This document shows, piece by piece, positions 2,750 to 41,739 of a DNA stretch of 64,000 bases. The notes beneath the pieces were generated by a model, which saw nothing but the letters and a program-made list of their open reading frames with translations, did no database searches and had not been told where the DNA came from. Position 1 is the first letter of the stretch, and each line of letters starts with the position of its first letter. Position numbers and translations under genes: made by a program. Source of the stretch: Ylistrum balloti (taxonomy: Eukaryota); NCBI RefSeq assembly GCF_031769215.1, contig NW_026782089.1, positions 248,001 through 312,000 of the forward strand, written 5' to 3'.

Positions 2750-5700
2750 AACCCCGGTGCTCACAACCACGATGTCCACAGCCATCCAGTCCCTGGTGCC
2801 AACAACCGTCTATCCCCCTGTGTCGACAGCCGTCCAGCCCCACGGTGTCCACAGCCGTCCAGTCCACGATGTCCACAGCCATCCACTCCCTGGTGCCAAC
2901 AACCGTCTATCCCCCAGTGTCCAAAGCCGTCCACTCCCCGATGTCCAAAGCCGTCCAGCCCACGGTGTCCACAACTGTCTATCCCCCGGTGCCCACAGCC
3001 GTCCAGCACCGGTGTCCACAGCCGTCTATCCCCCGGTGTCCACAACCGTCTATACCCCGGTGTCCACAGCCGTCCAGCCCACGGTGTCCACAGTCGTCCA
3101 GCACCGGTGTCCACAAGCGTCTATCTCCCGGTGTTCACAGCCGTCCAGCACCCGGTGTCCATGGCCGTCCAGCCCACGGTGTCCACAGCCGTCTATCCCC
3201 CGGTGTCCACAGCCGTCCAGCACAAGGTGTCCACAGCCGTCCAGCCCTAGGTGTCCACAGTCGTCCAGTCCCCGGTGTCCACAAGCCTCTATCTCCCGGT
3301 GTCCACAGCCGTCCAGCACCCGGTGTCCATGGCCGTCCAGCCCCACGGTGTCCACAGCCGTCTATCCCCCGGTGTCCACAGCCGTCCAGCACAAGGTGTC
3401 CACAGCCGTCCAGCCCTAGGTGTCCACAGTCGTCCAGTCCCCGGTGTCCACAAGCCTCTATCTCCCGGTGTCCACAGCCGTCCAGCACCCGGTGTCCATG
3501 GCCGTCCAGCCCCACGGTGTCCACAGCCGTCCAGTCCGCGGTGTCCACAGCCGTTTATCCCCCGGTGTCCACAGCCATCCAGCCCCCGGTGTCCACAGCT
3601 GTCCAGACCGGGTGTCCACAACCGTCCAGTCCCCGGTGTCCACAGCCGTCGAGCCCCATGTTTCCACAGCCGTCCAGCCCCCGGTGTCCACAGCCGTCCA
3701 GCCCCAGATGACCACAGCCGTCCAGCCCTCGATGTCCACAGCCGTCCACCCCCGGTGTACACAACCATCCATCCCCCTATGTACACAAGCGTCTATCTCC
3801 AGGTGTCCACAGCCGTCCAGCACCCGGTGTCCATAGCCATCCAGCCCCACGGTGTCCACAGCCGACCAGTCCACGATGTCCACAGCCATCCAGTCCCTGG
3901 TGCCAACAACCGTCTATCCCCCTGTGTCGACAGCCGTCCAGCCCCACGGTGTCCACAGCCGTCCAGTCCACGATGTCCACAGTCATCCACTCCCTGGTGC
4001 CAACAACCGTCCATCCACCAGTGTCCAAAGCCGTCCACTCCCCGATGTCCAAAGCCGTCCAGCCCACGGTGTCCACAACTGTCTATCCCCCGGTGCCCAC
4101 AGCCGTCCAGCACCGGTGTCCACAGCCGTCTATCCCCCGGTGTCCACAACCGTCTATACCCCGGTGTCCACAGCCGTCCAGCCCACGGTGTCCACAGTCG
4201 TCCAGCACCGGTGTCCACAAGCGTCTATCTCCCGGTGTTCACAGCCGTCCAGCACCCGGTGTCCATGGCCGTCCAGCCCACGGTGTCCACAGCCGCCCAG
4301 TCCCCGGTGTCCACAGCCGTCTATCCCCCGGTGTCCATAGCCGTCCAGCCCAAGGTGTCCACAGCCGTCCAGCCCTAGGTGTCCACAAGTCGTCCAGTCC
4401 CCGGTGTCCACAAACCTCTATCTCCCGGTGTCCACAGCCGTCCAGCACCAGGTGTCTATGGCCGTCCAGCCCCACGGTGTCCACAGCCGTCCAGTCGCTG
4501 GTGTCCACAGCCGTTTATCCCCCGGTGTCCACAGCCGTCTATCCCCCGGTGTCCACAACCGTCCAGTCCACGGTGTCCACAGCCGTTCAGCCCCCGGTGT
4601 CCACAGCCGTCCAGTCTCTGGTGTCCACAACCGTCTATCTACCGGTGTCCACAGCCGTCCAGTCCATGGTGTCCACAGTCGTCCAGTCTCTGGTGTCCAC
4701 AGCCGTCCAGCCCCGATGTCCACAGTCGTCCAGCCCCCGGTGGCCACAGCCGTCAATCTACCGGTGTCCACAGTCGTCCAGTCTCTGGTGTCCACAGCCG
4801 TCTATCTACCGGTGTCCACAGCCGTCCAGCACCCGGTGTCCATAGCCATCCAGCCCCACGGTGTCCACAGCCGACCAGTCCACGATGTCCACAGCCATCC
4901 AGTCCCTGGTGCCAACAACCGTCTATCCCCCTGTGTCGACAGCCGTCCAGCCCCACGGTGTCCACAGCCGTCCAGTCCACGATGTCCACAATCATCCACT
5001 CCCTGGTGCCAACAACCGTCTATCCCCCAGTGTCCAAAGCCGTCCACTCCCCGATGTCCAAAGCCGTCCAGCCCACGGTGTCCACAACTGTCTATCCCCC
5101 GGTGCCCACAGCCGTCCAGCACCGGTGTCCACAGCCGTCTATCCCCCGGTGTCCACAACCGTCTATACCCCGGTGTCCACAGCCGTCCAGCCCACGGTGT
5201 CCACAGTCGTCCAGCACCGGTGTCCACAAGCGTCTATCTCCCGGTGTTCACAGCCGTCCAGCACCCGGTGTCCATGGCCGTCCAGCCCACGGTGTCCACA
5301 GCCGCCCAGTCCCCGGTGTCCACAGCCGTCTATCCCCCGGTGTCCACAGCCGTCCAGCCCAAGGTGTCCACAGCCGTCCAGCCCTAGGTGTCCACAAGTC
5401 GTCCAGTCCCCGGTGTCCACAAACCTCTATCTCCCGGTGTCCACAGCCGTCCAGCACCAGGTGTCTATGGCCGTCCAGCCCCACGGTGTCCACAGCCGTC
5501 CAGTCGCTGGTGTCCACAGCCGTTTATCCCCCGGTGTCCACAGCCGTCTATCCCCCGGTGTCCACAACCGTCCAGTCCACGGTGTCCACAGCCGTTCAGC
5601 CCCCGGTGTCCACAGCCGTCCAGCACCCGGTGTCCACAGCCGTCCAGCCCCCGATGTCCACAGCCTTCCAGCCCCCGGTGTCCACAGCCGTCTATCTACT

Positions 5701-22401: not shown

Positions 22402-25400
22402 GCCTTCTGGCGGCCATGGCCGATATTTTTTATTTCTTGTGTAGGAATTCCTTGGGGTTAGGTGGTCATGATATGACATAAAATTAAGGTCAGATCTGAG
22501 CCATTCATTAGTTATGGGGGGGTAAAGTGGGGGGTAAAATTCATAAACAGCTCCATTATGACAAACCTACATTATATTTTTGGATTTTTTCTTCTTAATT
22601 TTCATGTAATAATCCATATCAAAACATTCATTAGTAAAATTGATTGAAAAAAATATTCCATTGTTGAAAAGTAGGTCATGGTAATTAAGCTCATTAATTG
22701 CGAATTATATTAAAGATGAACTTAATTTTCTGCCTTAATGTACATAAAAACAATACCTTTATCATGTACCATGTTTTAATAAGAAATATTTTTGCATACT
22801 TTAAAGAAAACAAAGAAGAGGCGGTGCTTTGAATTTTAGTTCGACAACTTTGACCATATGTCTGTATCTAGTGGTTTTACCGAAGTATTAACACAGAAAT
22901 GGCTAATGAAAGATATCAATCTTAACCTCTAGTGTTGCATTTCACTCCACTATACATACAATGGTCGTACACATAGTTAGTTACTCATTGTCACTGTCAG
23001 ACTCAGACCAGTCCTCAATCATCATTGCGTCATCAGCACAGCTGAGGTAGCTTGATGAGGCAGTTGGGTGTGCTATCCTAGACTGGTGTCGCTCATAAGA
23101 AAGGTACCAGAGAACAGATGCAATATGGGCACAGCAGCCCACTACCCTGGCACCAACCTTACACTGGCAATACCAACCAGATATAGGAGTCAAACCAGGG
23201 GAATACTCAATCCACAGGTTGTACAGTTTCGAAGCAACATGTCTGGAACGAATCTGAACTTTAATTAAGCCAGGCTTTTCCCTGCATGCCATTAATTCAT
23301 ATTGGCCATCTTCAGACAAGTGCTCCATGGTATATGACTTTGCCTGCTTCAACTGATATACTCCCATGGTAAGATCTCTCAACTCCGGTTCTGTCAGCTG
23401 AGGAAAGTCAGGCAAACTGGCCTCATCAAGCTTGACCCATATGGCTCTTTTCCTAGCCAAACCTTCTTTTTCAACTTGAATTTGCAATTTATTGGGACAT
23501 TTTGACAGAGCCAACATTCACTCAGCAATGATGAGGTCATTGGGAGAATCAGAGGCAAGTGGGGGGCGAAAAGCATTACAAATTGCACACACAATTCTCA
23601 CAAAATCACCTACAACTGGAATGAGAGTGTTGGGCAAAACATGCCCAAGGTCTTCCACTGCTTAATCCACCCATTTGCCGACTCCACAACCCACCTTACC
23701 TTTGTTACAAGACGAGATTCGTTTGCCTCAGTATGTGTGTGTTGTTTCTGCCCCTTTGGCAAGAAAAATGGCATTTCTGTTTTGATGCCAGCATCATTCA
23801 ACAGTTCTGTCACATCTTTGAAGCCTCTGTCAACGACAAGAACATCATCATCTTGAAACCAATCCTTGATGTTCTCAGTGTTAGTTTTCAACATGTGTTT
23901 TGTAATGTTGGCGTCATTATTTTGACCGTCTGCTAAATATGGGCCTAGGACAGACAGTATATAGCCATCTGAGGCCACAAGAAGCATTGGTTTCAGGAGA
24001 GGGCGTCCTTTGTGCATGGAAAAAGAGCGTCGTTGGAAAGTATAGTTGCTGGACTTTTCAACATAAATATATGTGCCATCAGCAACAGCTATAGCGACAT
24101 CTTCACCAGAGGCAAACATCTTCCTTGCAAATACCGTTGTATGGTTTTGAATTACTTGTTCTCTAGTGATGTGTTGCAGGCCAAGGTGTGAAGGAACGAA
24201 GTGGGTCATCAATGCTTGGCGAGCTGAATGAATACATTTTCCACATATTCTCTTTGTCATGTTGAACAGAGAAGCTAATATTGATAAAGACATGCCAGTC
24301 CTCAACTTTACAAGCAGGATGGCTAATGCAGTCCTTGCGCTTCTGTTCAGTGTAGAGTAAAGAGAGGGATTAACTGATCGTAAAAGGTCAGAAAATTGAT
24401 TTTTATACAGACCTGTGAGACGGTAGTAATCTTGATCAGTTAATCCATCTGAGGAATCAAAGTCTAAACAACTTTTCTTTGAAGCAGCTGCCCTAAGTGT
24501 CAAAAGGATCTCTGATATTTCAGAAGAATCCAGTTCAGTGTCTTTGCTGGAATATGCGAGTGAAGATAGACTATCAGATGGGAAATCACCATTCACTATG
24601 TGGGAAGAACAACATCTGCAGGTGTTTGGGACAAGGATACCTGTCTTAATAAAAATCTTTACTCGCATTTCTGTTGAGAGCATTACCATTTTACTTTTAC
24701 ATTCCTCTCTTAACATTTTACAAATGAAACATCGAGATTCACCTAATGTAGCCCGTGGAATGTCAAGTTTGATTTTTTTGTTTTCAGGTGACTCAAGCTG
24801 GTGCTCTACATCGCTACTAGGATGTTCAGTAGATGAATGGTGATTGTAGTATCTTCCCCTGCATTTTTTACATACGGGGTCACCAAACCTTAAGGCATCA
24901 TTAATATTTGCTTTCAAGTAAGACAGAATGTCTGTTTTATTCAGACAACAGAGCCTTACTTTATATTGTGCTTTACAACAAGCGCACTGCCTGTGCACTG
25001 GCATATTGATAAAAGAAAAGAAAACAGGGCATAAACTTAGAAAACACTCCTTATTAAAACCTTAATTTGGATGAACAAAATTATGAACAACAGTTGAATT
25101 ACAATTATATGTCTAAATTATATGTACAATATCAGTGACAGTCAAACCAAGAAAGTATACTAAAATCGCTGAGGTTGTGAAGTGTAGTTGCCACGTATTA
25201 ATTGTATATATAAGGGTATATGAACTGTCTGAGACAAGGTGCACATGTATACTCACCGGTAGACACAAAGATCCTTAACAAGGTATATGTCAGGGGATGG
25301 CATTATATCCCGCCATTTTAGCTTAAAGCTCAACCAGCCGTACCAAACTGGTTTAAATATCTCTACATTTATCAAGCAATTTATTTTAAACAGTTCTTAA

Positions 25401-25926: not shown

Positions 25927-26864
25927 CCAAATTGGCACTCCTCCTTTATTATAATTTTGCCTTTCCACTAACATTTGTCATAAATGTCTTTTAATATGTA
26001 TTCTTAACATCAACACGAATGACATCAAATGGAAAAAAGGTAACTTTATAGTTTGTAATCGATCAAGACGTCAACAAACCAGGAAGTCCAACAAGGGCAT
26101 ACCATTAATCAATTTGGATCACATTCCTTGAATTTTAGATCAGGATTATTTCACTATTCCCGATTACCCCTGAAAGAGGACACCGATTCCCTTAAATAGA
26201 TAAGATTCAAGACTTTAACATCCGGGTTTCAAGCATTCTCCGTTATGAATACATTATATTCTTCGGAGTATAGCATACCCCAAGGTTCAAAATACAAGGG
26301 GAACACTGATTAATATTTCCGAAAAATGTAAAAATAGCATAAATGAAGTCATTGATCCCCTGTTGTTAGTTGCGAAAATAATTATTAAATCGGCAGGCCT
26401 AAGAAGGTATAAGAAGTACATAGCAAATATTTAATTGGAGCCATTTTTCAAATCTGTCATTTCTGGTTGCTAAGCAACTTTGAGCTCGTAAAAGCAGATG
26501 AAAGTTTAGCAATTTTTTCATTAAAGTTTTTCTTATTTTCTCACCAATGATTTTATCAAATTTTAATGAAAGACGATTGACGATTGTTTGAAGGAAAATA
26601 CGATAGCTCTATCAAATAACAAGGAATGACTGTTATTGATAAAAATATAAGAATAAATTGGAACAATGAATACGTACAGAAACATTGAGCTTTTTAAAAA
26701 ATCACCAACAGAGCAAGGAGTAGTTTAGAAAATTGACGTCCTGACCTGTATACAATTGTTTTGTGCATACGTGTTCAGATTGAACGAAAGACACACAAGT
26801 GAATAACACATTTAAATACAAATTTACAGTAAGATAGAGTAGAACCGAACAATGCATCAAACTG

Positions 26865-26907
26865 CATCATACAGCTGTGTTTCGTCCTTCTAGTCTCATC
26901 AGTGATG
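26865..26907 (-). ncRNA. Minimal type I hammerhead ribozyme with intact catalytic core
   Basis: The minus strand reads CATCA-CTGATGA-GACTAGAAGGAC-GAAAC-ACAGCT-GTA-TGATG. Stem I is CATCA/TGATG, stem III is ACA/TGT within the palindrome ACAGCTGT, and the cleavage triplet is GUA. Stem II has one A-A mismatch. Confidence 0.8.
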
Positions 26908-27217
26908 TTAAGGACTTAAGCCTATGTAGCGAATGATGATAATCCGAAGTGATCGATAAGTCATAATGTAGACGGGGAGATAAAACAGCCCAATAATTAT
27001 ATCAGCTTCCTTATTTTCATATATCACATACTTTTAGAATACCAGAAAGTATAAATGTGTATTCTGAAAAATGCTACGATTCGAATGAATTGAAACATGG
27101 CAACAACAGTGTCTACCACTTGCTATATCAAAGACTGTACACAAGACACACAAGGGAATAGCACCATTTAATACAAATTTAGAGTTAGATACAGTGGAGC
27201 AAAACAATTAATTGAAA

Positions 27218-27254
27218 TGCTGTGTTTCGTCCCCTCTAGGACTCGCCAGTGATG
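27218..27254 (-). ncRNA. Degenerate hammerhead copy
   Basis: CATCA-CTGGCGA-GTCC(TAGAGG)GGAC-GAAAC-ACAGC. Stem II is perfect, the core has an A6>G change, and the cleavage site is lost. Confidence 0.6.
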
Positions 27255-27622
27255 TTCAGCCGTGGAAGCGACTTAGGAAAATCCAACGTGATTGTACAAG
27301 ATCTTTCACTCTTGTTTTAGAAGTATGAAATATTACTCGCTAAATATCATGTTTTGTAACCTCTAAAAACAACTAATTCGAGATAAAGAAATACCATAGA
27401 CATCACCAATATGTTGTGGAACCTCTAATATTTACTCCATTGCAAAAAGATAAATAAATGACACCGTATTCATTCCAATAGTTCTTGAGTTTATTGATTA
27501 ATTTTTATTCACATTTAAAATTTCTAAAAGCATACAGGTAGTTAAGTTAGTCTAAACAATTGATAAACATATTATCCAGTTTGTTGGTTCTCTGAATCTG
27601 TAATCTCACAGTAGTACCCATA

Positions 27623-29143
27623 TTAATCACACGATCCTTCATGTGCGCTAGCTACTCCCCTGAAAATGTAAAATGGCGTATATCAATAATGCAAAGTTTG
27701 AACGCTTTATACAAAATAAATTCCTTAAAGATATTTCTTAGAAACCCGAAAAAGACACATAACTGCATTACGTTTCATGCATTAGAAAGGAATATCATCA
27801 TTTGTCTTTCTCGCTGAATACATTCACCTTTTTTGTATTACAGATATTTATTTTCTCCTGGAAGACATTGGAGCAGATTACTTTAATAGATGGAAAGAAG
27901 AATGCTTCTCAGATATTCATTGTAATCAAAATGAAATGCAGTTTACTGAAGTGACAGGATGACTATACAAAAGAAGACTCAATGTACAGATATCGTATGA
28001 GTAAAACATGTATTAACATACTTGCACTCTCTGCTACAATCGTTGATGTACGTTTCCCCATCATCTCCACACACAGGATTGTAATCCATCGTACAGACAC
28101 ATAGGTCATCTTCACACTTTCCATTGTGGAGCAATCGGACATCACTGAAATGTTCAGTAGAATGGAATATAACGATGAAAGGTCTACCCTGAAATTGTTT
28201 TCTGTTTAACGAGGCTGTAAGCAAGCTGTATCTAGTAAACACAAATGGAATTGTATACGATAATAAAACTCTTTGACTATTTTGAAAATATTCCCATAGC
28301 TTAGCAACATTGTAGTCACATAGAGATTTTTTTTATGAAAATCTATTTATCTACTTAAAAGACATTTAAGTAAAATAAGAACCAGGCGACATGAAGTAAA
28401 ACAATGAATCAAGCTGCATCGTATATCTGTTTCGACCTTCGAAGAGAATAGAGAAAATCCATATTGGTTGAAAGAAATATCGGAAATCAAACGGGGAGGT
28501 ACACTAACAGCAGTATTCAATGATTTTCATAATTTTCAAAATGAATGATAGAACGACAAGTACATGTACATATTCTGAACCATGCCACTATTCGATTGGA
28601 ATTAACGCCCGTCATGTATAAAAGACACATTAGTGAACAACCCATTTCAATACAGATTAGATTACTGGTTACAAAATTACAGAAGAGCCAAATAATAAAG
28701 TAAAGTGAATCATGCAGTTGTATCGTCCTTTTATGACTCGTCACGATGTTATACTAGGGTAATAAATAAAAATCTAAATTACATTTCAAAAAAACCTTTT
28801 ATAACATATAATAGCGCCAGAAATTGAATTCACCTTGATCTTCTGTCCTGATTAATTTCAAGTGTTCAAAGTTTTGATATATCGTTGTTGTGATTAAAAC
28901 AGATTTCTCGAAGATTCTTAAGGGGTTTGTTATACGTTCAACAACCAGATTTCGGTGACCATGAGTACATTTGACTTACTTGCACTTCCTCATACAATCG
29001 TTTCCGTAAGTTACACCGTCTGCACCACATACGGGTTTGTGAATCATTTGACATGCGCATGCTTTTTTGGGAACTGAATTGGTCTCATCTGCCATAATAG
29101 CAGAGAAGCCAATCACCACTAGGAGAACTAATGTCAGCTTCAT
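27623..29143 (-). CDS. Secreted 2-domain Kazal serine protease inhibitor, gene A (107 aa)
   Basis: Coding exons are 29143-28980, 28144-28022 and 27659-27623 (GT-AG, phase 2), giving [113 protein letters not shown] is at 27495-27490. Confidence 0.9.
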
Positions 29144-29354
29144 GATTAGTTGGTATCTTCTAGGATGTACCTGCAAACATTAAAATGTAATACATTCGAG
29201 ATAATTGAATTAAATGTTCAATAACAGATCTTTTTGATAACATTCCACCACAAACTGTTGTTTGAATTAAGAAAGTAACATCGAGTTGATATTCATTGAG
29301 TGAAGTATGTGTTAGTGAATGTAACTGCAGACAATATTGTACAGTTGTACATAC

Positions 29355-29420
29355 CAAAAGTGATATTCTTCAGAGAGCTGGAGTATGGTTACTGGCTATT
29401 GTGAACCTGCACTATATATA
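29355..29420 (-). promoter_or_regulatory. TATA box and non-coding first exon of Kazal gene A
   Basis: TATATATA at 29413-29420, donor TTTTG|GTATGT at 29355/29354 and acceptor at 29170. The same layout is in paralog B. Confidence 0.6.
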
Positions 29421-30210
29421 GGCAATGTGTGTAGGTCATCATTAATTAAGACAAGGTGAATGTACATGGTCACTGGTCATGCATGTAACATGTTGTCAAA
29501 TGCCTCAAGCTTGTAAAATTATTGTTTATCAGAAGCATGTTTAGGTCCGAATGGCATGTAGTCATTTTGGAATATTTTCAGATCGAGGATATGACGTTAA
29601 TCAGGACACAATTATCAAATTTAAGTTCGATGATTAACAGAAGTAGGTCATGTAGGGAAAAAATCTTAATATACCATAGGAAAATTTCTTATTGTTAATT
29701 GTTATACACTTCAGTAAAATTGTCAATTTACATGAACCAGATCCAATGAAGTTGTTGTTTTACAGGATTTACTGTACTCGAAAGAGCCGGGGTCATAAGA
29801 AGACAGGTATCCAATCAATATTATACAGAAAAAAATGAATGAATGAGCTTTAAAACATATATCAAAGTTGGTTTTCGAACATTTGCTTATGTGTATTTCA
29901 AGTGATTTGTATGTCAAAGTTTTGCTGTACGGACAGTTTCAAATTCATGAGCTTGTGATATTAAAGTAACATTTACTTCCCATGGGTTTTCTATTACTAT
30001 CATTTTATAGATTTTATGGGTATTAATGAGTAAGTTATCTCCTCTTTAACATAGTACATTTTGCTAAACATTTAGTAATAACACCTATCACTTTCATTAT
30101 ATGTTTCTTTTAGATTTCTGCTCACCGCACATAAGAAACACAACTGCATAGCCGCTTTTAATACAAAATGTAGTGTTAGATACAATACAGACAAATAACG
30201 AATTAAAAGA

Positions 30211-30252
30211 CACCATACAACTGCTTCGTCCTTCAAGGACTCGACAGTGATA
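30211..30252 (-). ncRNA. Degenerate hammerhead copy (paralog at 41240-41281)
   Basis: TATCA-CTGTCGA-GTCC(TTGAA)GGAC-GAAG-CAGTT-GTA-TGGTG. Stem I pairs with G-U wobbles and the core has substitutions. Confidence 0.6.
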
Positions 30253-30599
30253 TTGATGGGCCTTACTTCTGAAACTTAGGAGGCAACTAAGGAAATTCCA
30301 AAGAGATCAAAGGAAATTTCAAATCAAGATAGAAGATGCACTAGCCCCATAATTAAGTAAACTTAGCAATTCATATATAAATGTAATGTCAGTACAACGT
30401 CAAGGACATGTGTTACCGTGCCACTATTCCAATGAATCAAACCATGACATGAAGGATTGGGCAAACCTCGTCGGTTAGAAATTCACCAGTGATGCTCACC
30501 ACATGCAATCTTGATTATTGTATAAAGACACACACACGAATAACGCCTTCAATACAAATATATAATTAGACACATTACGGTCAAACTATGAAGGTAACG

Positions 30600-30643
30600 G
30601 CACCAATCAGATATTTCATCCTGGTTGGACTCACCAGTGGTGC
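30600..30643 (-). ncRNA. Degenerate hammerhead copy with a covariant stem I
   Basis: GCACCA-CTGGTGA-GTCC(AACCA)GGAT-GAAA-TATCTGAT-TGGTGC. Stem I is a perfect 6 bp but differs in sequence from copy 1. Confidence 0.55.
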
Positions 30644-31249
30644 TACCATATAATTCTATAATTTCCATTTAATCATTTATAATATTGAATGAATTGTGCC
30701 ACTATTTCAGTTGAGTTTAAAAGTGGCAAACTTAAAATATGTCGATCTATTACGATAAATTGATATGACAAATCATTTTGAAATCTCAAAATGTACTGGG
30801 TAACTGTTCAACAAATTAATTTATTTTTTGTACCTGTATTGATTATTCAATAATACATATCTCAAAAGAAACGTATGTCCATGATGAAATTGTAATGCAA
30901 ATTTTCCAAATATATGTGAATGTCAAAGTGTTTTGGTGGTAGACAGACGAAATACTCTCAATTATTATTAACCCGTACATTAATTCAATTCATTCATGTG
31001 ATGTGTTTCATATTTTGACTGTGTTGTACTGAATGATGTATTATCACTAGATTGACCTTTATGTTCTGTTATGTTTCTGTGTGCTGTATTAGTATAATAC
31101 TATCACATAAGTGTAATATGATTTTTTGTGACATCAGCAGATGAAACAAACTTAGACCTAAAATGAAGGATTCAGTGGTTTCGAAGATATGATATTTTTT
31201 GTTGTTTTGTTTTTTTTTTGGCTTGGTAACAGTGGTAAAGTAGATTAGA

Positions 31250-31570
31250 TGTTTTGTTTTGTAAGGAAGGTTAAAACAATTAGATGTTTTGTTGTTAGAT
31301 GAGTGGTTTATAAAATTAGATGTTTTGTTGTTAGAGAGGTTAAGAAGATTAGATGTTTTGTTTTTGTTAGACTGGTTTAGAAAATTAGATGTTTTGTTTA
31401 TGTTAGAGTGGTTTAGAAGATTAGATGGTTTGTTGTTAGAGTGGTTTAGAAGATTAGATGCTTTGTTTTTGCTAGAGTGGTTTTGAAGATTAGATGCTTT
31501 GTTTTTGTAAGATTGGTGTAGGTGTAGAACAGTAGATATGTTGTGTTTGTTAGAGAGGTTTAGAAGAACA
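31250..31570 (+). repeat. Degenerate 33/36-bp tandem repeat (~9 copies), paralog of the 41740-42790 array
   Basis: Units like AGATTAGATGTTTTGTTGTTAGAGTGGTTTAGA. Confidence 0.8.
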
Positions 31571-33435
31571 GATATTTGGTGATTTCGAAGATTTGATGTG
31601 TTGTTTTTATCGCAACGGGATACCATAGGTATGAAAGTGTCCCAGCATATTGAAAGAGTATAGCAAGTCAATTTAAAATTAATTCCAAAGTGCAATGTCG
31701 ATCTTATGTTCCACAAAATTATTTAAGATATTTAATATATCATAATCATATATAACATGATGTCTTCCGAACGACCAAAATTCTTTCCCGCCTGTTCTTT
31801 CAATCAGAGAGCAATATATCTAGATCTCTTTTATGAAAGAGCTCTATGTAATGATGAGAATTATTGTGATATGATCCATCCACTTACCACTAAATTAGGG
31901 TCTTAAATGTAAATAGAAGATAATTTGTAGAAGCATGAATAAACATAGAAGATATACTTAAAAGTCGTGGTAAAATGAAAAATGCATAACATTGAAATTG
32001 ATTAGAAATATTTCGTCTCTGTAAACAGTTTGATAAATAAACAATACATTTGTCTTTTCTACCGAAACCAAACGCTGTCTTAATCGAAATCTTATGATAA
32101 CTAGGGTTTTGTGGGTCAATCCAATCAAGTACAAATGGAAAAGTTTCAGTAATGTTTTTTCCACATTTAAAATCTGTTTGTTTCCATTTGACATGCCACA
32201 CACATTCAGCTTATTATCATTACGCTGGGTTCATTTTGTTGTTCTTTTGGCATGCTTTAGAGATCTGTTTACCATTTTCAATAAAAATTATTCTACGTAT
32301 AATTCTTTTCTATCAATGAAAATCTATTTAGGTAATTAACTATCCTTTTGCCTTACCACTAACATTTGTCATAAATGTCTTGTAATATGTATTCTTAACA
32401 TTAACACGGATAACACAGCTCATAAAATAGAAAAAAGAATGACTTTATAATTTGTAATCGACCAAGAGGTCAACACACCAGGAAGTCCAACAAGGACATA
32501 CCTATAATCACACTCCTTGAATTTTAGATCCCAACTATTTCACTATTCCCGATTATCCCTGAATGAGGACACCGATTCCCTTAAATAGATAAGATTCAAG
32601 ATTTTAACATCCGGGTTTTAAAGCATTCTCTGCTATGAATACATGTATATTCTTCGAAGTATAGCATACCCCAAGGTTCAAAATACAAGGGGAACACTGA
32701 TTAATATTTCCGAAAAATGTAAAAATAGCAGAAATGAAGTCATTGATCCCCTGTTGTTAGTTGCGAAAATAGTTATTAAATCGGCAGGCCTAAGAAGGTA
32801 TAAGAAGTACATAGCAATTATTTAATTGGAGCCATTTTTTAAATCTGTCATTTTCTGGTTGCTAAGCAGCTTTGAGCTCGTAAAAGCAGATTAAACTTTA
32901 GCATTTGTTTAATGTTTTCTTTTTTTCCCACTATGATTTTATCAAATTGTAATGAAAGACGATTGACGATTATTTGAAGGAAAATACGATAGCCCCATCA
33001 AATAACAATAAATGACTGTTATTGACAAAACATATAGGAAGAAATTGTGACAATTAATGCATACCGAAACATTTATATTTTGGCTTTTAAAATGAATTTC
33101 TAATATTGACCTTTTAAAACTCACCATCAGAGCAAAGGTTAAGGTTGGGAAATTGACCTCCTGACCTGTTTACATTCTCAATGAAGTTAATTCTATTTCT
33201 ATTAAATGTTACACATGTAAATCGATCTATGATTCTCATGTTTAATAGTCAGAAGCTTTATACTTAATCTATGAAATGATATATATGTTGCGTCTTCACC
33301 GGCAGATGTATGTGCTCGTTTGTACATGCATAGGAACAACTTTGTAAAGATTTAATAAAAGGCAGACATTCGAATAACCCATTTTAATACAACTTTACAG
33401 TAAGATAAAGTAAAACAGAACAATGGATTAAACTG

Positions 33436-33473
33436 CATCATATAGCTTCGTCCTTCTAGACTCATCAGTGACG
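33436..33473 (-). ncRNA. Hammerhead copy in duplication unit B with a deleted stem III
   Basis: CGTCA-CTGATGA-GTCT(AGAA)GGAC-GAA-GCTATA-TGATG. It is the positional paralog of 26865-26907. Confidence 0.6.
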
Positions 33474-34119
33474 TCAAGAGCCTAAGCCTATGTGGCGAAT
33501 TAGTTTAATTCAAAGTGATCGAAAAGTCATAATCTAGACGGGGAAATAAAACAGCCCAATAATTATATCAGCTTCCTTATTTTCATATATCACATACTTT
33601 TAGAATATCGGAAAGTATATATGTGTATTCAGAACTATGCTACGATTCGAATGAATTGAAACGTGATATGCAGGTTACGGCAAATCTCGGGGACTACTAG
33701 AACTCGCCAGTGATGCTCAGTCGAGGTAGCGACTCAGGAAAATCCGATGTGATCGAAAGAAAAGTTAAAATGTGTACATCTGTACATTATCTTTCACTCT
33801 CTTTATTTTTTAGAAGTATCAAATATCACTCGTTAAACATTGTGTTTTGCAACCCCTGAAAATATTTATTTCGAGATAAAGAAATACCATAGACAACACC
33901 AATTTGTTGTGGAGCCTCTAATATTTACTCCATTGCATGAAGATAAATAAATGACACCGTATTCATTCCAATAGTTCTTGAGTTTATTGATTAATTTTGA
34001 TTCACATTTACAATTTCTGAAACATACAGGTAGTTAGGTCAGTCTAAACTATTGATAAACATATCATCCAGTTTGTTGGTTCTCTGAATCCGTTATGTAA
34101 TATCACAGCAGCCCCCATT

Positions 34120-35443
34120 TTAATCACACGTTCCTTCATGTGCGTTGCCTACTCCTCTGAAAATGTAAAATGGCGTATAGTAATAATCAAAATTTTAACG
34201 ATATATACCAAATAAGTTCCTTAAAGATATTTCTTATGGTTTTAAAAACAGAAACTCTAAAATTACACAGCATTACGCTTCAAGTATTAGAAATGAATAT
34301 CATCATTTTTCTTTCTCGCTGAATACATTCACCTTTATTATATTTCAGATATTTGTTTGCTCCTGGAAGACATTGGAGCAGATTACTTTAATAGATGAAA
34401 AGAAGAATGCTTCTCAGATATTCATTGTAATCAAAATGAAATGCAGTTTACTGAAGTGACAGGATGACTATACAAAAGAAGACTCAATGTACAGATATCG
34501 TATGAATAAAACATGTATTAACATACTTGCACTCTCTGCTACAATCGTTGATGTACGTTTCCCCATCATCTCCACACACAGGATTGTAATCCATCGTACA
34601 GACACACAGGTCATCTTCACACTTTCCATTATGGAGCAATCGAACATCACTGAAATGTTCAGTAAAATGGAATAAAATGGTAGCAGGTCAACCCTAAAGT
34701 TGTTTTCTATTTAACGAGGATGTAGGCAAGCTGTATCTAGTAAACACAATATGTAATTTATACGATAATAAAACTCTTTGACTATTTTGAAAACATTCGC
34801 ATTGCTAAGCAACATCTTAGTCACATTGATATTTTTTATGAAAATCTATTTATCTACTTAAAAGACATTTAAGTAAAGTAGAACCAAACGAAATGAAGTA
34901 AAATAATGAATCAAGCTGCATCGTATATCTGTGTCGACCTACGAGGATACGCAAGGAGTACTTTCTCCTAAATTGTTGAAATCTAGGAGGAGAATTTGAA
35001 AAATCCATATTGGTCGAAAGAAATATATTCGATTGGAACTAATGCCCATCATGTGCAAAAGACACATTTGTGAATAAGTCATTTCAATACAGATTAGATT
35101 ACCGGTTACAAAATTACAGGAGAGACAAATAATAAATTAAACTGAATCATGCAGTTGTATCGTCCTTTTCTGACTCGTCACGATTTTATACTAGGGTAAT
35201 TAATAGAAATCTAAATTTTAAGTGGTTTGTTATACGTTCAACAACCAGATTTCGGTGACTATGAGTACATTTGACTTACTTGCACTTCCTCATACAATCG
35301 TTTCCGTAAGTTACACCGTCTGCACCACATACGGGTTTGTGAATCATTTGACATGCGCATGCTTTTTTGGGAACTGAATTGGTCTCATCTGCCATAATAG
35401 CAGAGAAGCCAATCACCACTAGGAGAACTAATGTCAGCTTCAT
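34120..35443 (-). CDS. Secreted 2-domain Kazal inhibitor, gene B (107 aa), paralog of A
   Basis: Coding exons are 35443-35280, 34649-34527 and 34156-34120. The protein equals A except for the C-terminus [11 protein letters not shown]. Confidence 0.9.
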
Positions 35444-35645
35444 GATTAGTTGGTGTCTTCTAGGATATACCTGGAAACATTAAAATGTAATATATTCGAG
35501 ATAATTGAATTAAATGTTCAATAACAGATCTTTTTGATAACATTCCACCACAAACTGTTATCAAAGTAACATCGAGTTGATATTCATTGAGTGAAGTATG
35601 TGTTAGTGAATATAACTGCAGACAATATTGTACAGTTGTACATAC

Positions 35646-35711
35646 CAAAAGTGATATTCTTCAGAGAGATGGAGTATAGTTATTGGCTATTGTGAACATG
35701 CACTATATATA
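35646..35711 (-). promoter_or_regulatory. TATA box and non-coding first exon of Kazal gene B
   Basis: TATATATA at 35704-35711, donor at 35646/35645 and acceptor at 35470. Confidence 0.6.
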
Positions 35712-36037
35712 GGCAATGAGTATAGGTCATCATTAATTAAGACAAGGTGAATGTACATGGTCACTGGTCATGCATGTAACATGTTGCCAAATGCCTGAAG
35801 CCTGTAAAATTGTTGTTTATCAGAAGCATGTTTAGGTCCGAATGGCATGTAGTCATTTTAGATTATTTTGCAGATCGAGGATATGACATTAATCAGGACA
35901 CAATTATTAAATTTAAGTTCGCCATTCCTAAGTATTAATGTATTTTATTTCTTCTATTTTGTTTTTCTCTTATTCTTTATCTCTCTTTCTCTTTCTGTTG
36001 GGTTTGAGTTGGCATATCAAACTTTGCTGTTGATTGA

Positions 36038-39000
36038 ATGGGGGAGGGTATAAAGATTATCTCGGCCAATGGCCAAGGACTTTCGAACAAAGAAAAGCGT
36101 AAGGATGTTTTCTCTTACTTAAGACATACTAACAAAAATATATACTGTCTACAGGATACGCACTTCACTGATGATAATGAACAGTTGATAAGAAATGAAT
36201 GGGGTTATGAATCATTTTTCTCGTCCTTCCGCGGAAACTCTCGAGGGGTAGCTATTCTTATAGGTAGTAATTTTGAGTGCAAAATTCACAAGGAAAAGAA
36301 GGATTCATCAGGAAATTTCTTAGCACTAGACATAGAAGTAAATGACTCACACATTACACTTGTTAATTTATACGGTCCTAACCAAGATAATCCAGATTTT
36401 TATACAAAGATTTCAGACACCATAGAAGACTTTGAAAATACACACGTTATTATTTGTGGTGATTTTAACCTTGTTTTAAAGCCTATTCTTGATTATGACA
36501 ATACATATAAAAATAACAACAATCCAAAAGCAAGAGACAGGGTATTAGATACCATGGAAAATTTTAGTCTTGTAGATATTTTTAGAGAGCATGACGAAAA
36601 TGTTAGGAGATATACTTGGAGAAGAAAGAACCCAGTGAAACAGGCACGTCTTGACTTTTTCCTTGTATCTGAAAGTTTGCTATCTAGTGTAAACCATACA
36701 GGTGTTGATCCTGGTTATAGGAGTGATCATTCCTTCCCTAATATATCAATGACTTTTAACGAGTTTAAGAGAGGTAAAGGAACATGGAAACTTCTTCATG
36801 ATCTAGAATATTTAAACACTGTAAATACTTGTATCAATACAGTAAAGAAACAATATTGTATACCAGTTTATGATCTTAATAATATTGAAAATATTCCTAA
36901 TTCATTAATACAATTCACTATTAATGATCAATTATTTTTAGAAACTTTACTGATGGAAATTCGAGGGAAATCCATAGCTTATGCATCATACAAGAAAAAA
37001 CAATCTCATTTAAGGGAAGGTAATCTTATGAAAGTAATACAAGAGCTAGAAGCACAGGAAAACATTGATATAGATGAATTGAATGAGAAAATGCAGGATT
37101 TAGTAAAACTAAGAACACATAAGATTAAAGGGAGTATTATTAGATCAAAGACCAAATGGGCGGAAGAGGGGGAAAACCAACCAGTTACTTCTTTAACTTA
37201 GAAAATAGAAACTATATATCTAAAATAATACCAAAATTACAAACCGACAATAATAACATAATAACAAAACAGGAAAGGATATTGGAAAAAGTTTGTTCTT
37301 TTTACAAAAATCTCTATGATGTCTCAGATAGTGGTAATATACAAGACATTGATCTTAATCATTATATCAGTGATGAAGTTCCTAAACATTCTGCACAAGA
37401 GTCTGGAAATCTAGAAGGAGAAATTACCTATACAGAAGCAGGAAATACTTTAAAATTTATGAAAAACAATAAGAGTCCTGGGTCGGATGGGTTTACAACA
37501 GAATTTTTCAAATGTTTCTGGGGGAAAATAGGGGAATTTATTGTTAGGTCTATTAACTTCGGTTATCATACAGGGCAACTATCCATAACACAGAGGCAGG
37601 GCTTAATTACATGCATACCAAAACCAGACAAACCTAAGCATTTCATAAAAAAACTGGAGGCCAATTTCACTGTTAAACACTGTGTATAAAATAGCATCAG
37701 GTACTATAGCACAGAGAATAAAAACTGTCCTAGACAAATTAATTAACAATGACCAAACAGGTTTTTTAGCTGGGCGTTACATAGGGGTTAACACACGATT
37801 GATTTATGACATTATGCAATACACTGAGGAAAAGGATATACCAGGAATGTTATTAATGATTGATTTTCAGAAAGCATTTGATTCTGTGTCTTGGCTATTC
37901 ATAGAAAAAGTTCTACTTCTTTTTGGTTTTGGTAAAAGCATAATTCACTGGTTTAAAACATTACATAATAAAGCACAGTCAGCTGTAAATCAGGGGGGGA
38001 ACCTATTTTCTTTCTTTGATATTAAGAGGGGCTGCCGACAGGGGGACCCGGTCGCGCCGTATATGTTTATTCTTTGTGCTGAGGTTTTGGCAATAAAGTT
38101 AAGAAACAATAGAAATATCATTGCTGTTGAAGTTGAAAACTGTCCTATATTACTATCTCAGTATGCTGATGATACTTCGCTTATCCTCGATGGGTCCGAA
38201 AAATCACTAAAAGAATCCATCAGAGAGCTTAATGAATTTGCAAATATTTCTGGATTAAAAATGAATATTGATAAAACTCAGGTAATATGGATTGGAAGTA
38301 AAAAATATAATGAGGATAAACTTTTACCTGAACTTAACCTACAGTGGGGCAAAGAAAGATTTACATTATTAGGAGTTGATTTTAGTGTGAATCTACATGA
38401 AATACCGAAACTAAACTTTGATAAAAAAAACTCACTAAACTGAAATCGCTAATAAAAATATGGAATAGAAGATCATTAACTCCAATAGGAAAAATAAACA
38501 TTATAAAGTCGTTGCTTATATCACAATTTAATCATCTCTTTATTTCATTACCTAATCCAGATGAGAAGTTTCTGTTTAAACTCAACTCTCTACTTTTTGA
38601 CTTTCTATGGGATGGAAGACCAGATAAAATCAAACGGGATACAATTATGCAAAACTATGCTAATGGTGGTCTTAAGATGGTCAATCTTGTAGCTTTTATA
38701 AATGCATTGAAACTGACTTGGATAAGGAGACTCTATCGCAGTACTGAGAAATGGCAGATAATTCTAAAAACCTATATTGACACTGACCTTCTTGCAAACT
38801 GTGGTAATAATTATATTCATTTATGCATAAAAAAGTGCAAAAACAAATTTTAGTGTGATGTTTTCAAAGCTTGGGGTACACTTAACACAAAATATGAGGA
38901 TAAGCTATTTCAGAGTAATATATTATCTGTCCCAATTTGGTATAACAATAAAATAAAGATAGGAGGTAAAACAGTATTTTATGAGAGTTGGTTTTAGAAG

Positions 39001-39840
39001 AATATAACTATCATAGCTAATTTAATCAAAGATACCAACAGATGTGTTTTCTATGGAAGAGAAGAATTTATTCGAAAATATCAAATAAATACAAATTTTT
39101 TACAATACCAGGGTCTGGTCTCTGCAGTCAAAAAATTTATTGCATCAGATACTATCTCTAACCCCTCTATAATCTATCCTTGCATACCAATCACCTTACG
39201 TATCTTTCTTCAAGACAAAAAAGGGTCAAAAAGGTTTTATAATACTCTAATTAAATGTAACGTGTTACCATCGGGTACCAAAAAATGGAATAGTATATTT
39301 GATAATATAGATAAACAAACTTGGAATAAGTACTATTTAATGCCATTCCATGTAACAAAAAATACGAAGTTCCAGTGGTTCCAGTATAGGGTAATCCACC
39401 ATGCATTAGCAACAAATTCCCTTCTTTTTAAAATTAGATTAGTTATCTCCCCTCTTTGTGTGTTGTGTAACTCTGAGCACGAAACAATCAGTCATCTGCT
39501 GTGGGAATGTCAGGAAGTACAAAGACTATTACAGAGTCTTGATATTTTGTTAGAAGCTCTATTTATCCCTTTCTAAGTAAACAAGCAAACTTTCATTCTT
39601 GGTCTCCTACATCAAAACTTCCTTCCGAGTAACAGAGTAGACAATGAGATTATAATTATTATCAAACAGTATATTTATAAAATGAGATGCTTACACCGTT
39701 CACTAAACTTGCATGCACTAATTAATACAATCAAAGATAATTATATGATACAAAAATATATAGCTAATGGTAAGGATGATAAAGTAAAACGTAAATTTGA
39801 GAATGAATGGAAAAAATGGGAAAAATTAATACAGTTTTGA
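36038..39840 (+). pseudogene. Disrupted ORF2: APE endonuclease, reverse transcriptase and C-terminal Cys/His motif
   Basis: Endonuclease motifs IISANGQGL, CLQDTH, ICGDFN and SDH; RT motifs DFQKAFDSV, GCRQGDP and QYADDT; C-terminal CVLCNSEHETISHLLWEC. Frameshifts near 37190, 37685 and 38435, and in-frame stops at 38853 and 39576. Confidence 0.92.
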
Positions 39841-40352
39841 TCTACACACTTTGATCTATTACTCATCGCATTACTAGTTTTTCTTTTTTTCTATAATTTT
39901 TTATAATTATATACATAACAGTCCTTGACCATACCGAGTAATCAGATATAAAGGAAGAAAAACATTAAAAGATTAAATTACTCTAACCTATTTTACCATC
40001 TCACCCAACAATCCACTTTACTATTTCTTCATTTTCTTCAATTTCTTTCTCTTTAAATTTCTTATCCCTAATAAAGTTCTATTTCATTTTCTCATTTCTG
40101 TATGTTGATGTCAATTTATGGTTGTGTGTGTGTTTATGCATGTGTGCATGGGTGCATTTCAAACAAAAGTTTACTGTGATATTTATGAATCATAATGGTT
40201 ATGAAAGTATGAATCTTGATTTGATGATGATAATGAATTGTTGAATGTGGATGATGATGATGCATTATTTAGTATGTACAATAATCATGATAGTAATATT
40301 GATTGTGATATATATGTTGAAATGGATGGTGAGGAAGATTATCATGTTTTTG

Positions 40353-40354
<2 letters not shown>

Positions 40355-40402
<48 letters not shown>
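40355..40402 (+). repeat. (GAT)16 microsatellite in the LINE 3' UTR
   Basis: Read directly. Confidence 0.95.
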
Positions 40403-40403
<1 letters not shown>

Positions 40404-41739
40404 CATTATTTAGTGTGTAACATAATAATATTGATTGTGATATATGAGGATTATCATGTATGGTGATAATAATAATAATAGTAGTAGTAATGATCACATG
40501 CATTGTTGAATGTTGATGATGATGTTGGTGATTCTTTTGAATGGAGTGTATTTGTTTGACACGCAATGACTATATGTGCACCTGTGGTTGGATGTGTGAG
40601 AGGGTGTGAGTGTATTTGTCCTGTTCAACGTGTAAAATCTTGAAAAATAAAAAAAAATATATAAAAAAAAAATTTAAGTTCGATGATTGAAAGAATTAGG
40701 TCATGCAGGGAAAAAAATCTTAATATACCATGGGAAAGTTTCTTGTTGTTAATTGTTATACACTTCAGTAAAATTGTCAATTTACATGAACCAGATCCAA
40801 TGAAGTTGTTGTTTTACAGGATTTACAGTACCTGAAAGAGCTGGGTTAATAAGAAGACAGGTATCCGATCAATATTATACTTAAAAAATGGATCAATGAG
40901 CTTTAAATCTTATATGTAAATGATGTTTGTCTAAAACAGATCTTCGACATATATCAAAGTTGGTTATCGAACATACGATTATGGGTATTTGAATTGATTC
41001 GTATGTCAAAGTTTTGCTGTACGGGCACTTTTCGCACAAAATATCATGAATTTGTAATATCAAAGTTAAACTTGCATCTCATGGATTCGTTTTCTATGTA
41101 TCATTTCATAGATTCGATGAGCATCTAGATTGTTCTTTTTGTTAAACATGTAGTTATAACACCTATCACGTTCAGTATATGCCGCTTTTACACAAAATGT
41201 AGTGGTAGATACAATACAGACAAATAATAAATAAAAAGACACCATACAACTGCTTCGTTCTTCTAGGACTCGACAGTGATATTGATGGGCCTTACTTCTG
41301 AAACTTAGGAGGCAACTAAGGAAATTCCAAAGAGATCAAAGGAAATTTCAAATCAAGATGGAAGATGTACTAGCCCCATAATTAAGTAAACTTAGCAATT
41401 CATATATAAATGTAATGTCAGTACAACGTCAAGGACATGTGTTACCGTGCCACTATTCCAATGAATCAAACAATGACATGCAGGATTGGGCAAACCTCGT
41501 TGGTTAGAAATCAACCAGTGATGCTCACCACATGCAATCTTGATTATTGTATAAAGACACACAAACGAATAACGTCTTCGATACAAATATATAATTAGAC
41601 ACATTACGGTCAAACTATGAAGGTAACGCCACTAAAGCTATACTGAAAACAAACCTGGACCTAATGTAAAGGTTTCGAAGATTTGATATTTTTTGTTTTG
41701 TTTGTTTTTTTTATGTTGGTTTTAAAGATTTAATGTTTT

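What the first reader, a model, noticed from the sequence alone, without database searches (positions are those of the whole stretch)
26865..26907. Intact minimal type I hammerhead ribozyme ~620 nt downstream of Kazal gene A's poly(A) signal, in the sense orientation
All catalytic elements are in the right order: CUGAUGA, a G-C-closed stem II, GAAA, the A15.1-U16.1 pair, a GUA cleavage triplet and a perfect 5-bp stem I. The 3-bp stem III sits in a palindrome (ACAGCTGT), the hallmark of hammerheads that cleave as dimers in Penelope-like elements and metazoan retrozymes. Predicted cleavage is between 26870 and 26869 on the minus strand. Read-through transcripts of gene A would contain it, so it could cleave co-transcriptionally downstream of the poly(A) site (inference). 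No ORF or standard feature marks it.
Basis: partly seen in the sequence, partly recalled or inferred. Interest (0 to 1): 0.8.

Follow-up and report, generated by a model that had tools for sequence, protein, structure and literature searches.

The report
Decayed hammerhead copy in a retrozyme repeat
The 43-base motif is a real descendant of a self-cutting hammerhead RNA, but it is one worn-out copy of a small mobile repeat found thousands of times in this bivalve genome, and nothing marks it as a device serving the neighbouring Kazal gene.

Summary
It is not a chance motif. It lies in a ~327-nt repeat (27103-26777) of a family with thousands of copies. The family consensus is a canonical type I hammerhead: 3,564 exact hits to a strict pattern, none to the reversed control. 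An intact member reaches Rfam RF00163's gathering score. Tandem units are spaced 347-399 nt, as in the non-LTR retrozymes described in mussels.

"Intact" does not hold for this copy:
- Helix II has a substitution and a deletion (+3.8 versus -3.2 kcal/mol).
- A 2-nt insertion puts the helix III palindrome out of register, so the dimer mode is lost.
- The tandem partner upstream is dead.
- No Rfam hammerhead_1 match appears even at E up to 10.
- In genomic context its helices have pairing probability of about 0, against 0.85-0.97 for an intact member.

The paralogous copy behind Kazal unit B lost core bases, and the motif is no better conserved than its flanks. About a third of dispersed copies (10 of 33) keep the full core anyway. 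No RNA data were available.

Earlier follow-ups of this scan described the same family on other DNA of this genome. This is an ordinary relic of a known kind.

The parts
26864..26908 (-). Hammerhead-derived motif (the finding). The core nucleotides are all kept. Helix II is broken, helix III carries a 2-nt insertion, and helix I has 5 bp. The nominal cleavage site is 26870|26869.
   Evidence: 44.3 bits with family model R1; no RF00163 hit; energies and pair probabilities; 2-nt insertion absent from most family copies.
26777..27103 (-). One ~327-nt copy of the dispersed non-coding retrozyme-like element: head 27103-26909, hammerhead 26908-26864, tail 26863-26777. GC content is 34%.
   Evidence: More than 20 loci match with the same ends at 71-75% identity. 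The first look gave 1613-3384 candidates. GC.
27132..27259 (-). Upstream partial tandem copy (hammerhead plus tail). Its hammerhead (27255-27199) is dead: the core reads CUGGCGA (A6 to G), and helix III and the cleavage site are deleted. It shares the GAAACACAGC variant with the main copy. Spacing to the main copy is 347 nt.
   Evidence: 20.3 bits.
33348..33665 (-). Paralogous element copy behind Kazal unit B, 86% identical to the main copy. Its hammerhead (33474-33435) lost A15.1 and neighbouring bases through a 5-nt deletion, and G16.2 is changed to A.
   Evidence: (37.2 bits).
28707..28749 (-). Decayed family hammerhead lying between the two Kazal-domain ORFs of gene A. C3 is deleted, GAA reads GAU, and U16.1 is changed to C.
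   Evidence: 24.9 bits.
30210..30253 (-). Family hammerhead with good helices but a dead core: CUGUCGA (A6 to U) and A15.1 changed to G.
   Evidence: 51.7 bits, alignment shown.
30600..30643 (-). Decayed family hammerhead. The core reads CUGGUGA and the cleavage triplet is lost.
   Evidence: (29.9 bits).
35144..35186 (-). Decayed family hammerhead, the unit-B paralogue of the 28707-28749 copy.
   Evidence: 24.8 bits.
41239..41282 (-). Family hammerhead with the same dead-core changes as 30210-30253, plus a helix II mismatch.
   Evidence: (50.1 bits).
27490..27509 (-). Two AATAAA hexamers downstream of the last Kazal-coding segment of gene A. This is context, not part of the element.
   Evidence: sequence; Kazal_1 domains in the ORFs at 28976-29176 and 27979-28242.

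Best explanation
The motif is the hammerhead of an old, neutrally decaying copy of a small non-coding mobile repeat, of the non-LTR 'retrozyme' type related to Penelope-like-element hammerheads. By analogy with mussel retrozymes (inference from PMC7229834), intact tandem units would be transcribed, adjacent type I hammerheads would cut the RNA into ~350-400-nt monomers, and these would be circularised and copied back into DNA. Helix III is short and palindromic, so two ribozymes can pair. The window holds about 1.4 tandem units inserted downstream of Kazal gene A before the A/B gene-unit duplication. This copy happens to keep all core nucleotides, as about a third of dispersed copies do. It has lost helix II, the dimer register of helix III and its tandem partner, so it most likely no longer cleaves to any useful extent. 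Its position and sense orientation behind the Kazal gene are incidental. Shown here: homology, family size, consensus structure, the lesions, and the lack of extra conservation. Inferred: the life cycle, and inactivity of this copy.
For: Repeat nature: searches gave 1613-3384 first-look candidates, with dozens of scored matches at 71-85% identity and shared ends. Family hammerhead: 3,564 exact matches to CTGANGAGTCC-N4-6-GGACGAAACAGCTGTH against 0 for the reversed control. In DNA run X1, word depth at the motif is about 44,000 against about 10 for single-copy flanks. Rfam Hammerhead_1 hits the intact member L008 at 34.1 bits, gathering score 34. The consensus dimer's minimum-energy fold is the dimeric hammerhead, -33.3 kcal/mol. 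Tandem spacing is 347-399 nt, GC is 34-39%, and no coding ORF appears in 70 family loci. This matches the Mytilus retrozymes, about 5000 type I hammerheads in 350-390-bp repeats (PMC7229834), and the 'helix I 6 bp, helix II 4 bp, short palindromic helix III' architecture (PMC4209133). Lesions in this copy: alignment to the family; helix II +3.8 versus -3.2 kcal/mol; hammerhead fold +0.7 versus -7.8 kcal/mol; pair probabilities about 0.00 versus 0.85-0.97 with 30-100 nt of flank. The 2-nt insertion is absent from 201,502 of 212,369 depth units of family contigs and from all 33 dispersed copies. No RF00163 hit appears at E up to 10. No selection is visible: the paralogue behind unit B has lost core bases, and A-versus-B identity is 82% in the motif against 82-92% in the flanks. 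10 of 33 dispersed copies keep the full core.
Against: All catalytic core nucleotides and the G10.1-C11.1 pair are intact. Natural hammerheads with a mismatch in helix II still cleave slowly: axolotl HHR_Amex2, with a U.U mismatch, gave 22% cleavage in 1 h (PMC7229834). The insertion gives helix III three pairs and a tetraloop as a monomer, +1.6 versus +2.4 kcal/mol, so weak residual monomeric cleavage cannot be excluded by computation. Family-level cleavage, transcription and circular RNAs were not tested here. The folded units are no more stable than shuffled sequence, z -0.84 and -0.60. Within-family covariation is nil, as expected for young copies 93% alike.
Confidence: 0.88

Rival explanations
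1. One reading: the copy is a working minimal hammerhead that cuts read-through transcripts of Kazal gene A downstream of the poly(A) site, as a monomer or a dimer, and so helps 3'-end formation or termination.
For: The core is complete. It is in sense orientation, about 600 nt past the AATAAA signals. Helix III forms 3 bp as a monomer. Hammerheads with weakened helix II can retain slow activity (PMC7229834).
Against: It is one of 8 family copies in the window and of thousands in the genome. The equivalent copy behind unit B is destroyed, and the motif is not conserved above its flanks. Helix II is unstable and competing hairpins take over in context. The dimer register is broken and the cis partner is dead. 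No RNA evidence exists.
Confidence: 0.05
2. The tandem pair at 27259-26777 is still a live retrozyme unit that yields a ~347-nt circular RNA.
For: The tandem arrangement has 347-nt spacing, as in retrozymes.
Against: The upstream hammerhead has A6 changed to G and lacks helix III and the cleavage site. Releasing a monomer needs two cuts. The copy is only 71-75% identical to other members. The unit fold is no more stable than shuffles, z +0.74.
Confidence: 0.03
3. A chance hammerhead-like pattern unrelated to any ribozyme.
For: A loose descriptor fires about 0.05 times per 64 kb at random. No Rfam hit reaches a gathering score. The minimum-energy fold is not the hammerhead, z +1.08.
Against: There is clear homology to a family whose consensus is a canonical hammerhead (E about 4e-14 with a model that excluded this copy).
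Confidence: 0.01
4. The family motif looks like a hammerhead but does not self-cleave in any copy, and serves another role in the element, for example as a protein or reverse-transcriptase recognition structure.
For: No covariation within the family. Penelope-type minimal hammerheads showed low activity in vitro (PMC4209133). No cleavage or RNA data were obtained here.
Against: The consensus has all 13 core nucleotides, a 6/4-bp helix I/II and a palindromic helix III. It reaches Rfam's curated threshold. The closely similar mussel retrozyme hammerhead cleaves at about 0.1 per min and gives abundant circular RNA (PMC7229834).
Confidence: 0.03

Closest known systems
Metazoan non-LTR retrozymes with type I hammerheads (Cervera and de la Pena 2020, PMC7229834), especially the Mytilus galloprovincialis family
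   Same: The host is a bivalve (as the scan's earlier notes say; I did not verify the species). There are thousands of copies. Units are non-coding, low in GC and ~350-400 nt long, in short tandems plus dispersed copies. Each unit carries one type I hammerhead with a 6-bp helix I, a 4-bp helix II and a 2-bp helix III with a palindromic tetraloop.
   Different: The window copy is a decayed 1.4-unit relic with a broken helix II and a 2-nt insertion in helix III. Expression and circular RNAs are untested here. This genome's family also swells into 45-nt arrays made only of hammerheads. I did not find such arrays described in the papers I read.
Hammerheads in the flanking repeats of Penelope-like elements, which act as dimers (Cervera and de la Pena 2014, PMC4209133)
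   Same: A short, palindromic helix III lets two tandem ribozymes pair. The motifs are massively dispersed in invertebrate genomes.
   Different: The family here has canonical 4-bp helix II and 6-bp helix I, not the 7-8-bp helix II with a bulged base of the minimal Penelope-type motifs. No RT/GIY-YIG ORF lies next to any of the 70 loci examined. A link to the genome's GIY-YIG elements could not be tested.
Rfam RF00163 Hammerhead_1
   Same: The family consensus aligns end to end and reaches the gathering score in member L008, 34.1 bits against 34.
   Different: The window copy gives no RF00163 match at E up to 10. Its only hammerhead-related match is RAGATH-1-hammerhead at 19 bits against a cut-off of 56.3.
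Gene-embedded hammerheads with proposed mRNA-processing roles: the discontinuous hammerhead in rodent Clec2 3'UTRs and intronic hammerheads of amniotes (from my own knowledge, not checked here)
   Same: A sense-oriented hammerhead sits in or just after a transcription unit.
   Different: Those motifs are conserved at orthologous positions across species. This one is a repeat copy no better conserved than its flanks, and its paralogue has been destroyed.

Membership tests
Hammerhead ribozyme, type I (RF00163) | Conserved core: C3 U4 G5 A6 N7 G8 A9, G12 A13 A14, the A15.1-U16.1 pair, H17, and the G10.1-C11.1 pair | tested here: met
   Read directly from the sequence.
Hammerhead ribozyme, type I (RF00163) | Three helices around the core, with helix I open | tested here: inconclusive
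   Helix I has 5 bp and helix III has 3 bp. Helix II has only the closing G-C, then an A.A mismatch, C-G and U.G, at +3.8 kcal/mol. Pair probabilities are about 0 in context.
Hammerhead ribozyme, type I (RF00163) | Score at or above Rfam's gathering threshold | tested here: not met
   The window copy gets no RF00163 hit, either at gathering or at E up to 10. The intact family member L008 meets it, 34.1 against 34 bits.
Hammerhead ribozyme, type I (RF00163) | Site-specific self-cleavage 3' of position 17 | not testable with these tools
   This needs in vitro transcription or RNA end mapping. No RNA runs were available.
Metazoan non-LTR retrozyme | Short tandem repeats of about 150-450 bp, each with one type I hammerhead | tested here: met
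   Hammerhead spacing is 347 nt in the window and 307-399 nt in loci L007, L021, L023 and L028.
Metazoan non-LTR retrozyme | Non-coding, GC below 45%, without LTR, PBS or PPT | tested here: met
   GC is 34-39%. There are no real ORFs in 70 loci; open frames come only from 45-nt arrays. No tRNA-like or other Rfam match appears in 26700-27100. PBS and PPT were not specifically searched.
Metazoan non-LTR retrozyme | Expressed as self-cleaved linear and circular RNAs of unit length | not testable with these tools
   The only run found (X1) is DNA, held as contigs.
Metazoan non-LTR retrozyme | Highly self-paired unit RNA | tested here: inconclusive
   Linear folds of three units give z = -0.84, -0.60 and +0.74 against shuffles. 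These copies are decayed and were folded as linear molecules.
Penelope-like element flanking-repeat hammerhead | Location in the repeats flanking an RT plus GIY-YIG ORF | tested here: not met
   No such ORF lies in 70 family loci of about 3 kb each.
Dimer-acting hammerhead | A15.1 to U16.1 self-complementary, so that two copies form an extended helix III | tested here: not met
   The family consensus ACAGCUGU meets it, and its dimer minimum-energy fold is the dimeric hammerhead. The window copy reads ACACAGCUGU. The palindrome pairs 2 nt out of register, leaving AC between A14 and the helix.

The most novel reading that the evidence does not exclude
Despite its lesions, the copy keeps slow monomeric self-cleavage, because the 2-nt insertion gives helix III three pairs and a tetraloop. 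It then acts on Kazal A read-through transcripts as a domesticated co-transcriptional cleavage element downstream of the poly(A) site.
Probability: 0.03. Interest if true: 0.45.

Novelty: new member of a known kind. Interest (0 to 1): 0.12.

Why it matters
It matters little by itself. It is one more decayed copy of a hammerhead-bearing retrozyme family of a kind already described in mussels, and already reported several times by this scan on other DNA of the same genome. The useful lesson concerns method. In such genomes about a third of decayed copies keep a complete catalytic core. An 'intact core' next to a gene is therefore expected by drift and is no evidence of domestication. Helix integrity, the dimer register and conservation against paralogues must be checked as well. 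If this copy were shown to cleave and to shape Kazal mRNA 3' ends, it would be an example of a retrozyme hammerhead co-opted for gene expression. The evidence here points the other way.

Tried and rejected
- Chance motif: rejected by homology.
- Rfam match for the window copy: none at gathering or at E up to 10 for hammerhead_1. The only matches are RAGATH-1-hammerhead at 19 bits and two snoRNA models at chance level.
- Covariation within the family: none, 1 compensatory cell and no better than shuffles. The copies are too alike for this to be informative.
- Penelope-like element link: no RT/GIY-YIG ORF in 70 loci. I did not try another route.
- RNA evidence: the one run found is DNA contigs. 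It confirmed the copy number and the 2-nt insertion but says nothing about expression.
- Rod-like retrozyme fold: not supported by z-scores.
- A fuzzy-regex census of all hammerhead units timed out. A covariance-model search replaced it.
- A second hammerhead-like string on the opposite strand of the element's head lacks G10.1-C11.1 and a palindromic helix III. I set it aside as a regex artefact carried by a repeat.

Full report
**1. The observation**

On the minus strand, 26907-26865 reads CAUCA CUGAUGA GACUAGAAGGAC GAAA CACAGCUGU A UGAUG.
- Helix I is 5 perfect pairs.
- All hammerhead core nucleotides are present.
- G10.1-C11.1 closes helix II.
- A15.1-U16.1, C-G and A-U form a 3-bp helix III with a CAGC loop.
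- The triplet is GUA, and the nominal cut is 26870|26869.

The Kazal-domain ORFs are on the same strand: 28976-29176 and 27979-28242, Pfam Kazal_1 at E 6e-9 and 3e-8. Two AATAAA hexamers lie at 27509-27504 and 27495-27490.

My own descriptor finds this as the only such motif in the window. A descriptor that loose fires about 0.05 times per 64 kb of composition-matched random sequence, about 750 per Gb. The pattern alone would therefore be weak evidence.

**2. It is not chance: it sits in a repeat**

The window's own genome is 648 Mb in 1372 contigs. Searching it with 26780-26990 and with 26100-27300 gave 1613 and 3384 first-look candidates. Dozens of scored matches were 66-85% identical. Most dispersed copies share the ends 27103 and 26777, giving an element of ~327 nt.

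In the window, a partial copy lies directly upstream at 27259-27132, so the two hammerhead positions are 347 nt apart. Other loci carry two or three units 307-399 nt apart.

The elements are non-coding: 70 family loci hold no real ORFs. GC is 34-39%.

**3. The family's hammerhead is canonical**

Aligned copies give this consensus: GCAUCA CUGACGA GUCC-UAGAA-GGAC GAA ACAGCUGU A UGAUGY.
- A strict pattern for it occurs 3,564 times in the genome. The reversed control occurs 0 times.
- In DNA run X1 the word depth over the motif is about 44,000, against about 10 for single-copy flanks.
- Rfam Hammerhead_1 (RF00163) hits the intact member L008 end to end at 34.1 bits, gathering score 34.
- In the consensus, A15.1 to U16.1 is exactly the palindrome ACAGCUGU. 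The minimum-energy fold of two consensus copies is the dimeric hammerhead, with an 8-bp intermolecular helix III, at -33.3 kcal/mol.

This is the architecture described for metazoan type I hammerheads: helix I 6 bp, helix II 4 bp, and a 1-2-bp helix III with a small palindromic loop (PMC4209133). The repeat structure matches the non-LTR retrozymes of the mussel Mytilus galloprovincialis, which has about 5000 type I hammerheads in 350-390-bp repeats. Those cleave at about 0.1 per min and are expressed as abundant circular RNAs (PMC7229834).

Covariation within the family is nil. That is expected for copies 93% alike and says nothing either way.

**4. The window copy is a worn member**

I built covariance model R1 from 28 other family members, leaving the window copy out of the seed. 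It finds 8 family hammerheads in the window, all on the minus strand. The finding scores 44.3 bits. It ranks third of the 8 and falls in the lower part of the 27-76-bit range of dispersed copies.

Against the consensus it has four lesions:
- **Helix II:** GUCC became GA-C, one substitution and one deletion. This leaves G-C, A.A, C-G, U.G at +3.8 kcal/mol, against -3.2 for the consensus.
- **Helix III:** there is a 2-nt insertion, ACACAGCUGU. It is absent from all 33 dispersed copies examined and from 201,502 of 212,369 depth units of family contigs in run X1.
- **Helix I:** 5 pairs instead of 6.
- **Upstream flank:** it has changed so that it pairs with the 3' strand of helix II.

The insertion slightly helps helix III as a monomer, +1.6 against +2.4 kcal/mol. 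It also shifts the palindrome 2 nt out of register. In a dimer two extra bases would then sit between A14 and helix III.

The hammerhead fold of this copy costs +0.7 kcal/mol, against -7.8 for the consensus. With 30-100 nt of natural flank, the pairing probabilities of its hammerhead helices are about 0.00. The intact member L008 gives 0.85-0.97 for helices I and II.

Rfam gives no Hammerhead_1 match, even at E up to 10 on 401 nt. The only hammerhead-related match is RAGATH-1-hammerhead at 19 bits, against a cut-off of 56.3.

The tandem partner upstream (27255-27199) has A6 changed to G and has lost helix III and the cleavage site. No dimer in cis is possible, and no unit-length RNA can be released.

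**5. No sign of selection for a gene-level role**

- The element was present before the Kazal A/B unit duplication.
- The paralogous copy behind unit B (33474-33435) lost A15.1 and neighbouring bases through a 5-nt deletion and is dead.
- A-versus-B identity is 82% over the motif (gaps counted), 87% over the head and 82% over the tail. The non-repeat flank beyond is 82% with gaps and 92% without.
- Keeping a full core is not special: 10 of 33 dispersed copies do so.
- The other seven copies in the window all carry core mutations.
- A single-copy contig from another DNA data set (X1) carries the same locus with the same insertion. This shows only that the copy is fixed or common.
- No RNA run was found, so transcription and cleavage are untested.

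**6. Verdict**

The motif is truly hammerhead-derived and belongs to a retrozyme-type repeat family of a known kind. 'Intact' is not supported, and the proposed role in cleaving Kazal A read-through transcripts is not supported either.

Residual slow monomeric cleavage cannot be excluded by computation. The core is complete, and natural hammerheads with a helix II mismatch still cut slowly (axolotl HHR_Amex2, PMC7229834).

Earlier follow-ups of this scan reached the same description of the family on other DNA of this genome. I treated those notes as leads and re-derived the family here independently.

**7. Limits**

'Bivalve/scallop' comes from earlier scan notes only.
- The link to autonomous Penelope-like elements could not be tested.

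Noticed in passing
G000 contigs, e.g. C4:395616-395737, C18:481790-481911, C21:270390-270601; locus L027:2873-3170: Many exact family hammerheads lie in head-to-tail arrays with a 45-nt period, so the repeat unit is the ribozyme alone. One array on C19:1174834-1175945 has a 180-nt period. Earlier scan notes describe these arrays as swellings inside the ~400-nt element.
   Followed up: partly
window 26864-41282, minus strand: All 8 family hammerheads in the window are on the minus strand, the sense strand of the Kazal genes. One lies between the two Kazal-domain ORFs of gene A (28707-28749). Every copy except the finding has a mutated core. Several are duplicates from the A/B unit duplication, so only about 4-5 insertions are independent, too few to call an orientation bias.
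   Followed up: partly
window 23610-25004 (-) and 22981-23517 (-): A 464-aa ORF carries a PIF/Harbinger-type DDE transposase domain (DDE_Tnp_4, E 4.8e-12). It is followed by a 178-aa ORF with no Pfam hit. This looks like a DNA transposon about 1.9 kb downstream of the motif.
   Followed up: partly
G000:C507:243028-253603 (loci L001, L004, L012, L014, L016): Contig C507 holds a 99.6-100% identical copy of the region, with the same arrangement of A and B element copies. It is probably the other haplotype or a very recent segmental duplication.
   Followed up: no
G000:C422:240415-261997 and C129:50248-67783: GIY-YIG domain hits lie inside 755-aa open frames that repeat every ~5.3 kb in tandem. 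These are candidate autonomous Penelope-like elements that might mobilise the retrozyme family. Their DNA could not be fetched.
   Followed up: no
L021:1482-1527 (-), L027:1646-1690 (+), L039:1653-1698 (+), L059:1608-1653 (+); the window equivalent is about 26925-26965 (+): A recurrent string on the opposite strand of the element's head, CUGAGGA...CGAAAG...GUC, matched my loose hammerhead regex. It lacks the G10.1-C11.1 pair and any palindromic helix III, so it is probably a coincidence carried along by the repeat.
   Followed up: partly
window 31069-31716 (-): A 215-aa open frame consists of an imperfect peptide repeat (..NKTSNLLNHSN..). It is also present in the C507 copy. It may be a coding or a non-coding minisatellite.
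   Followed up: no
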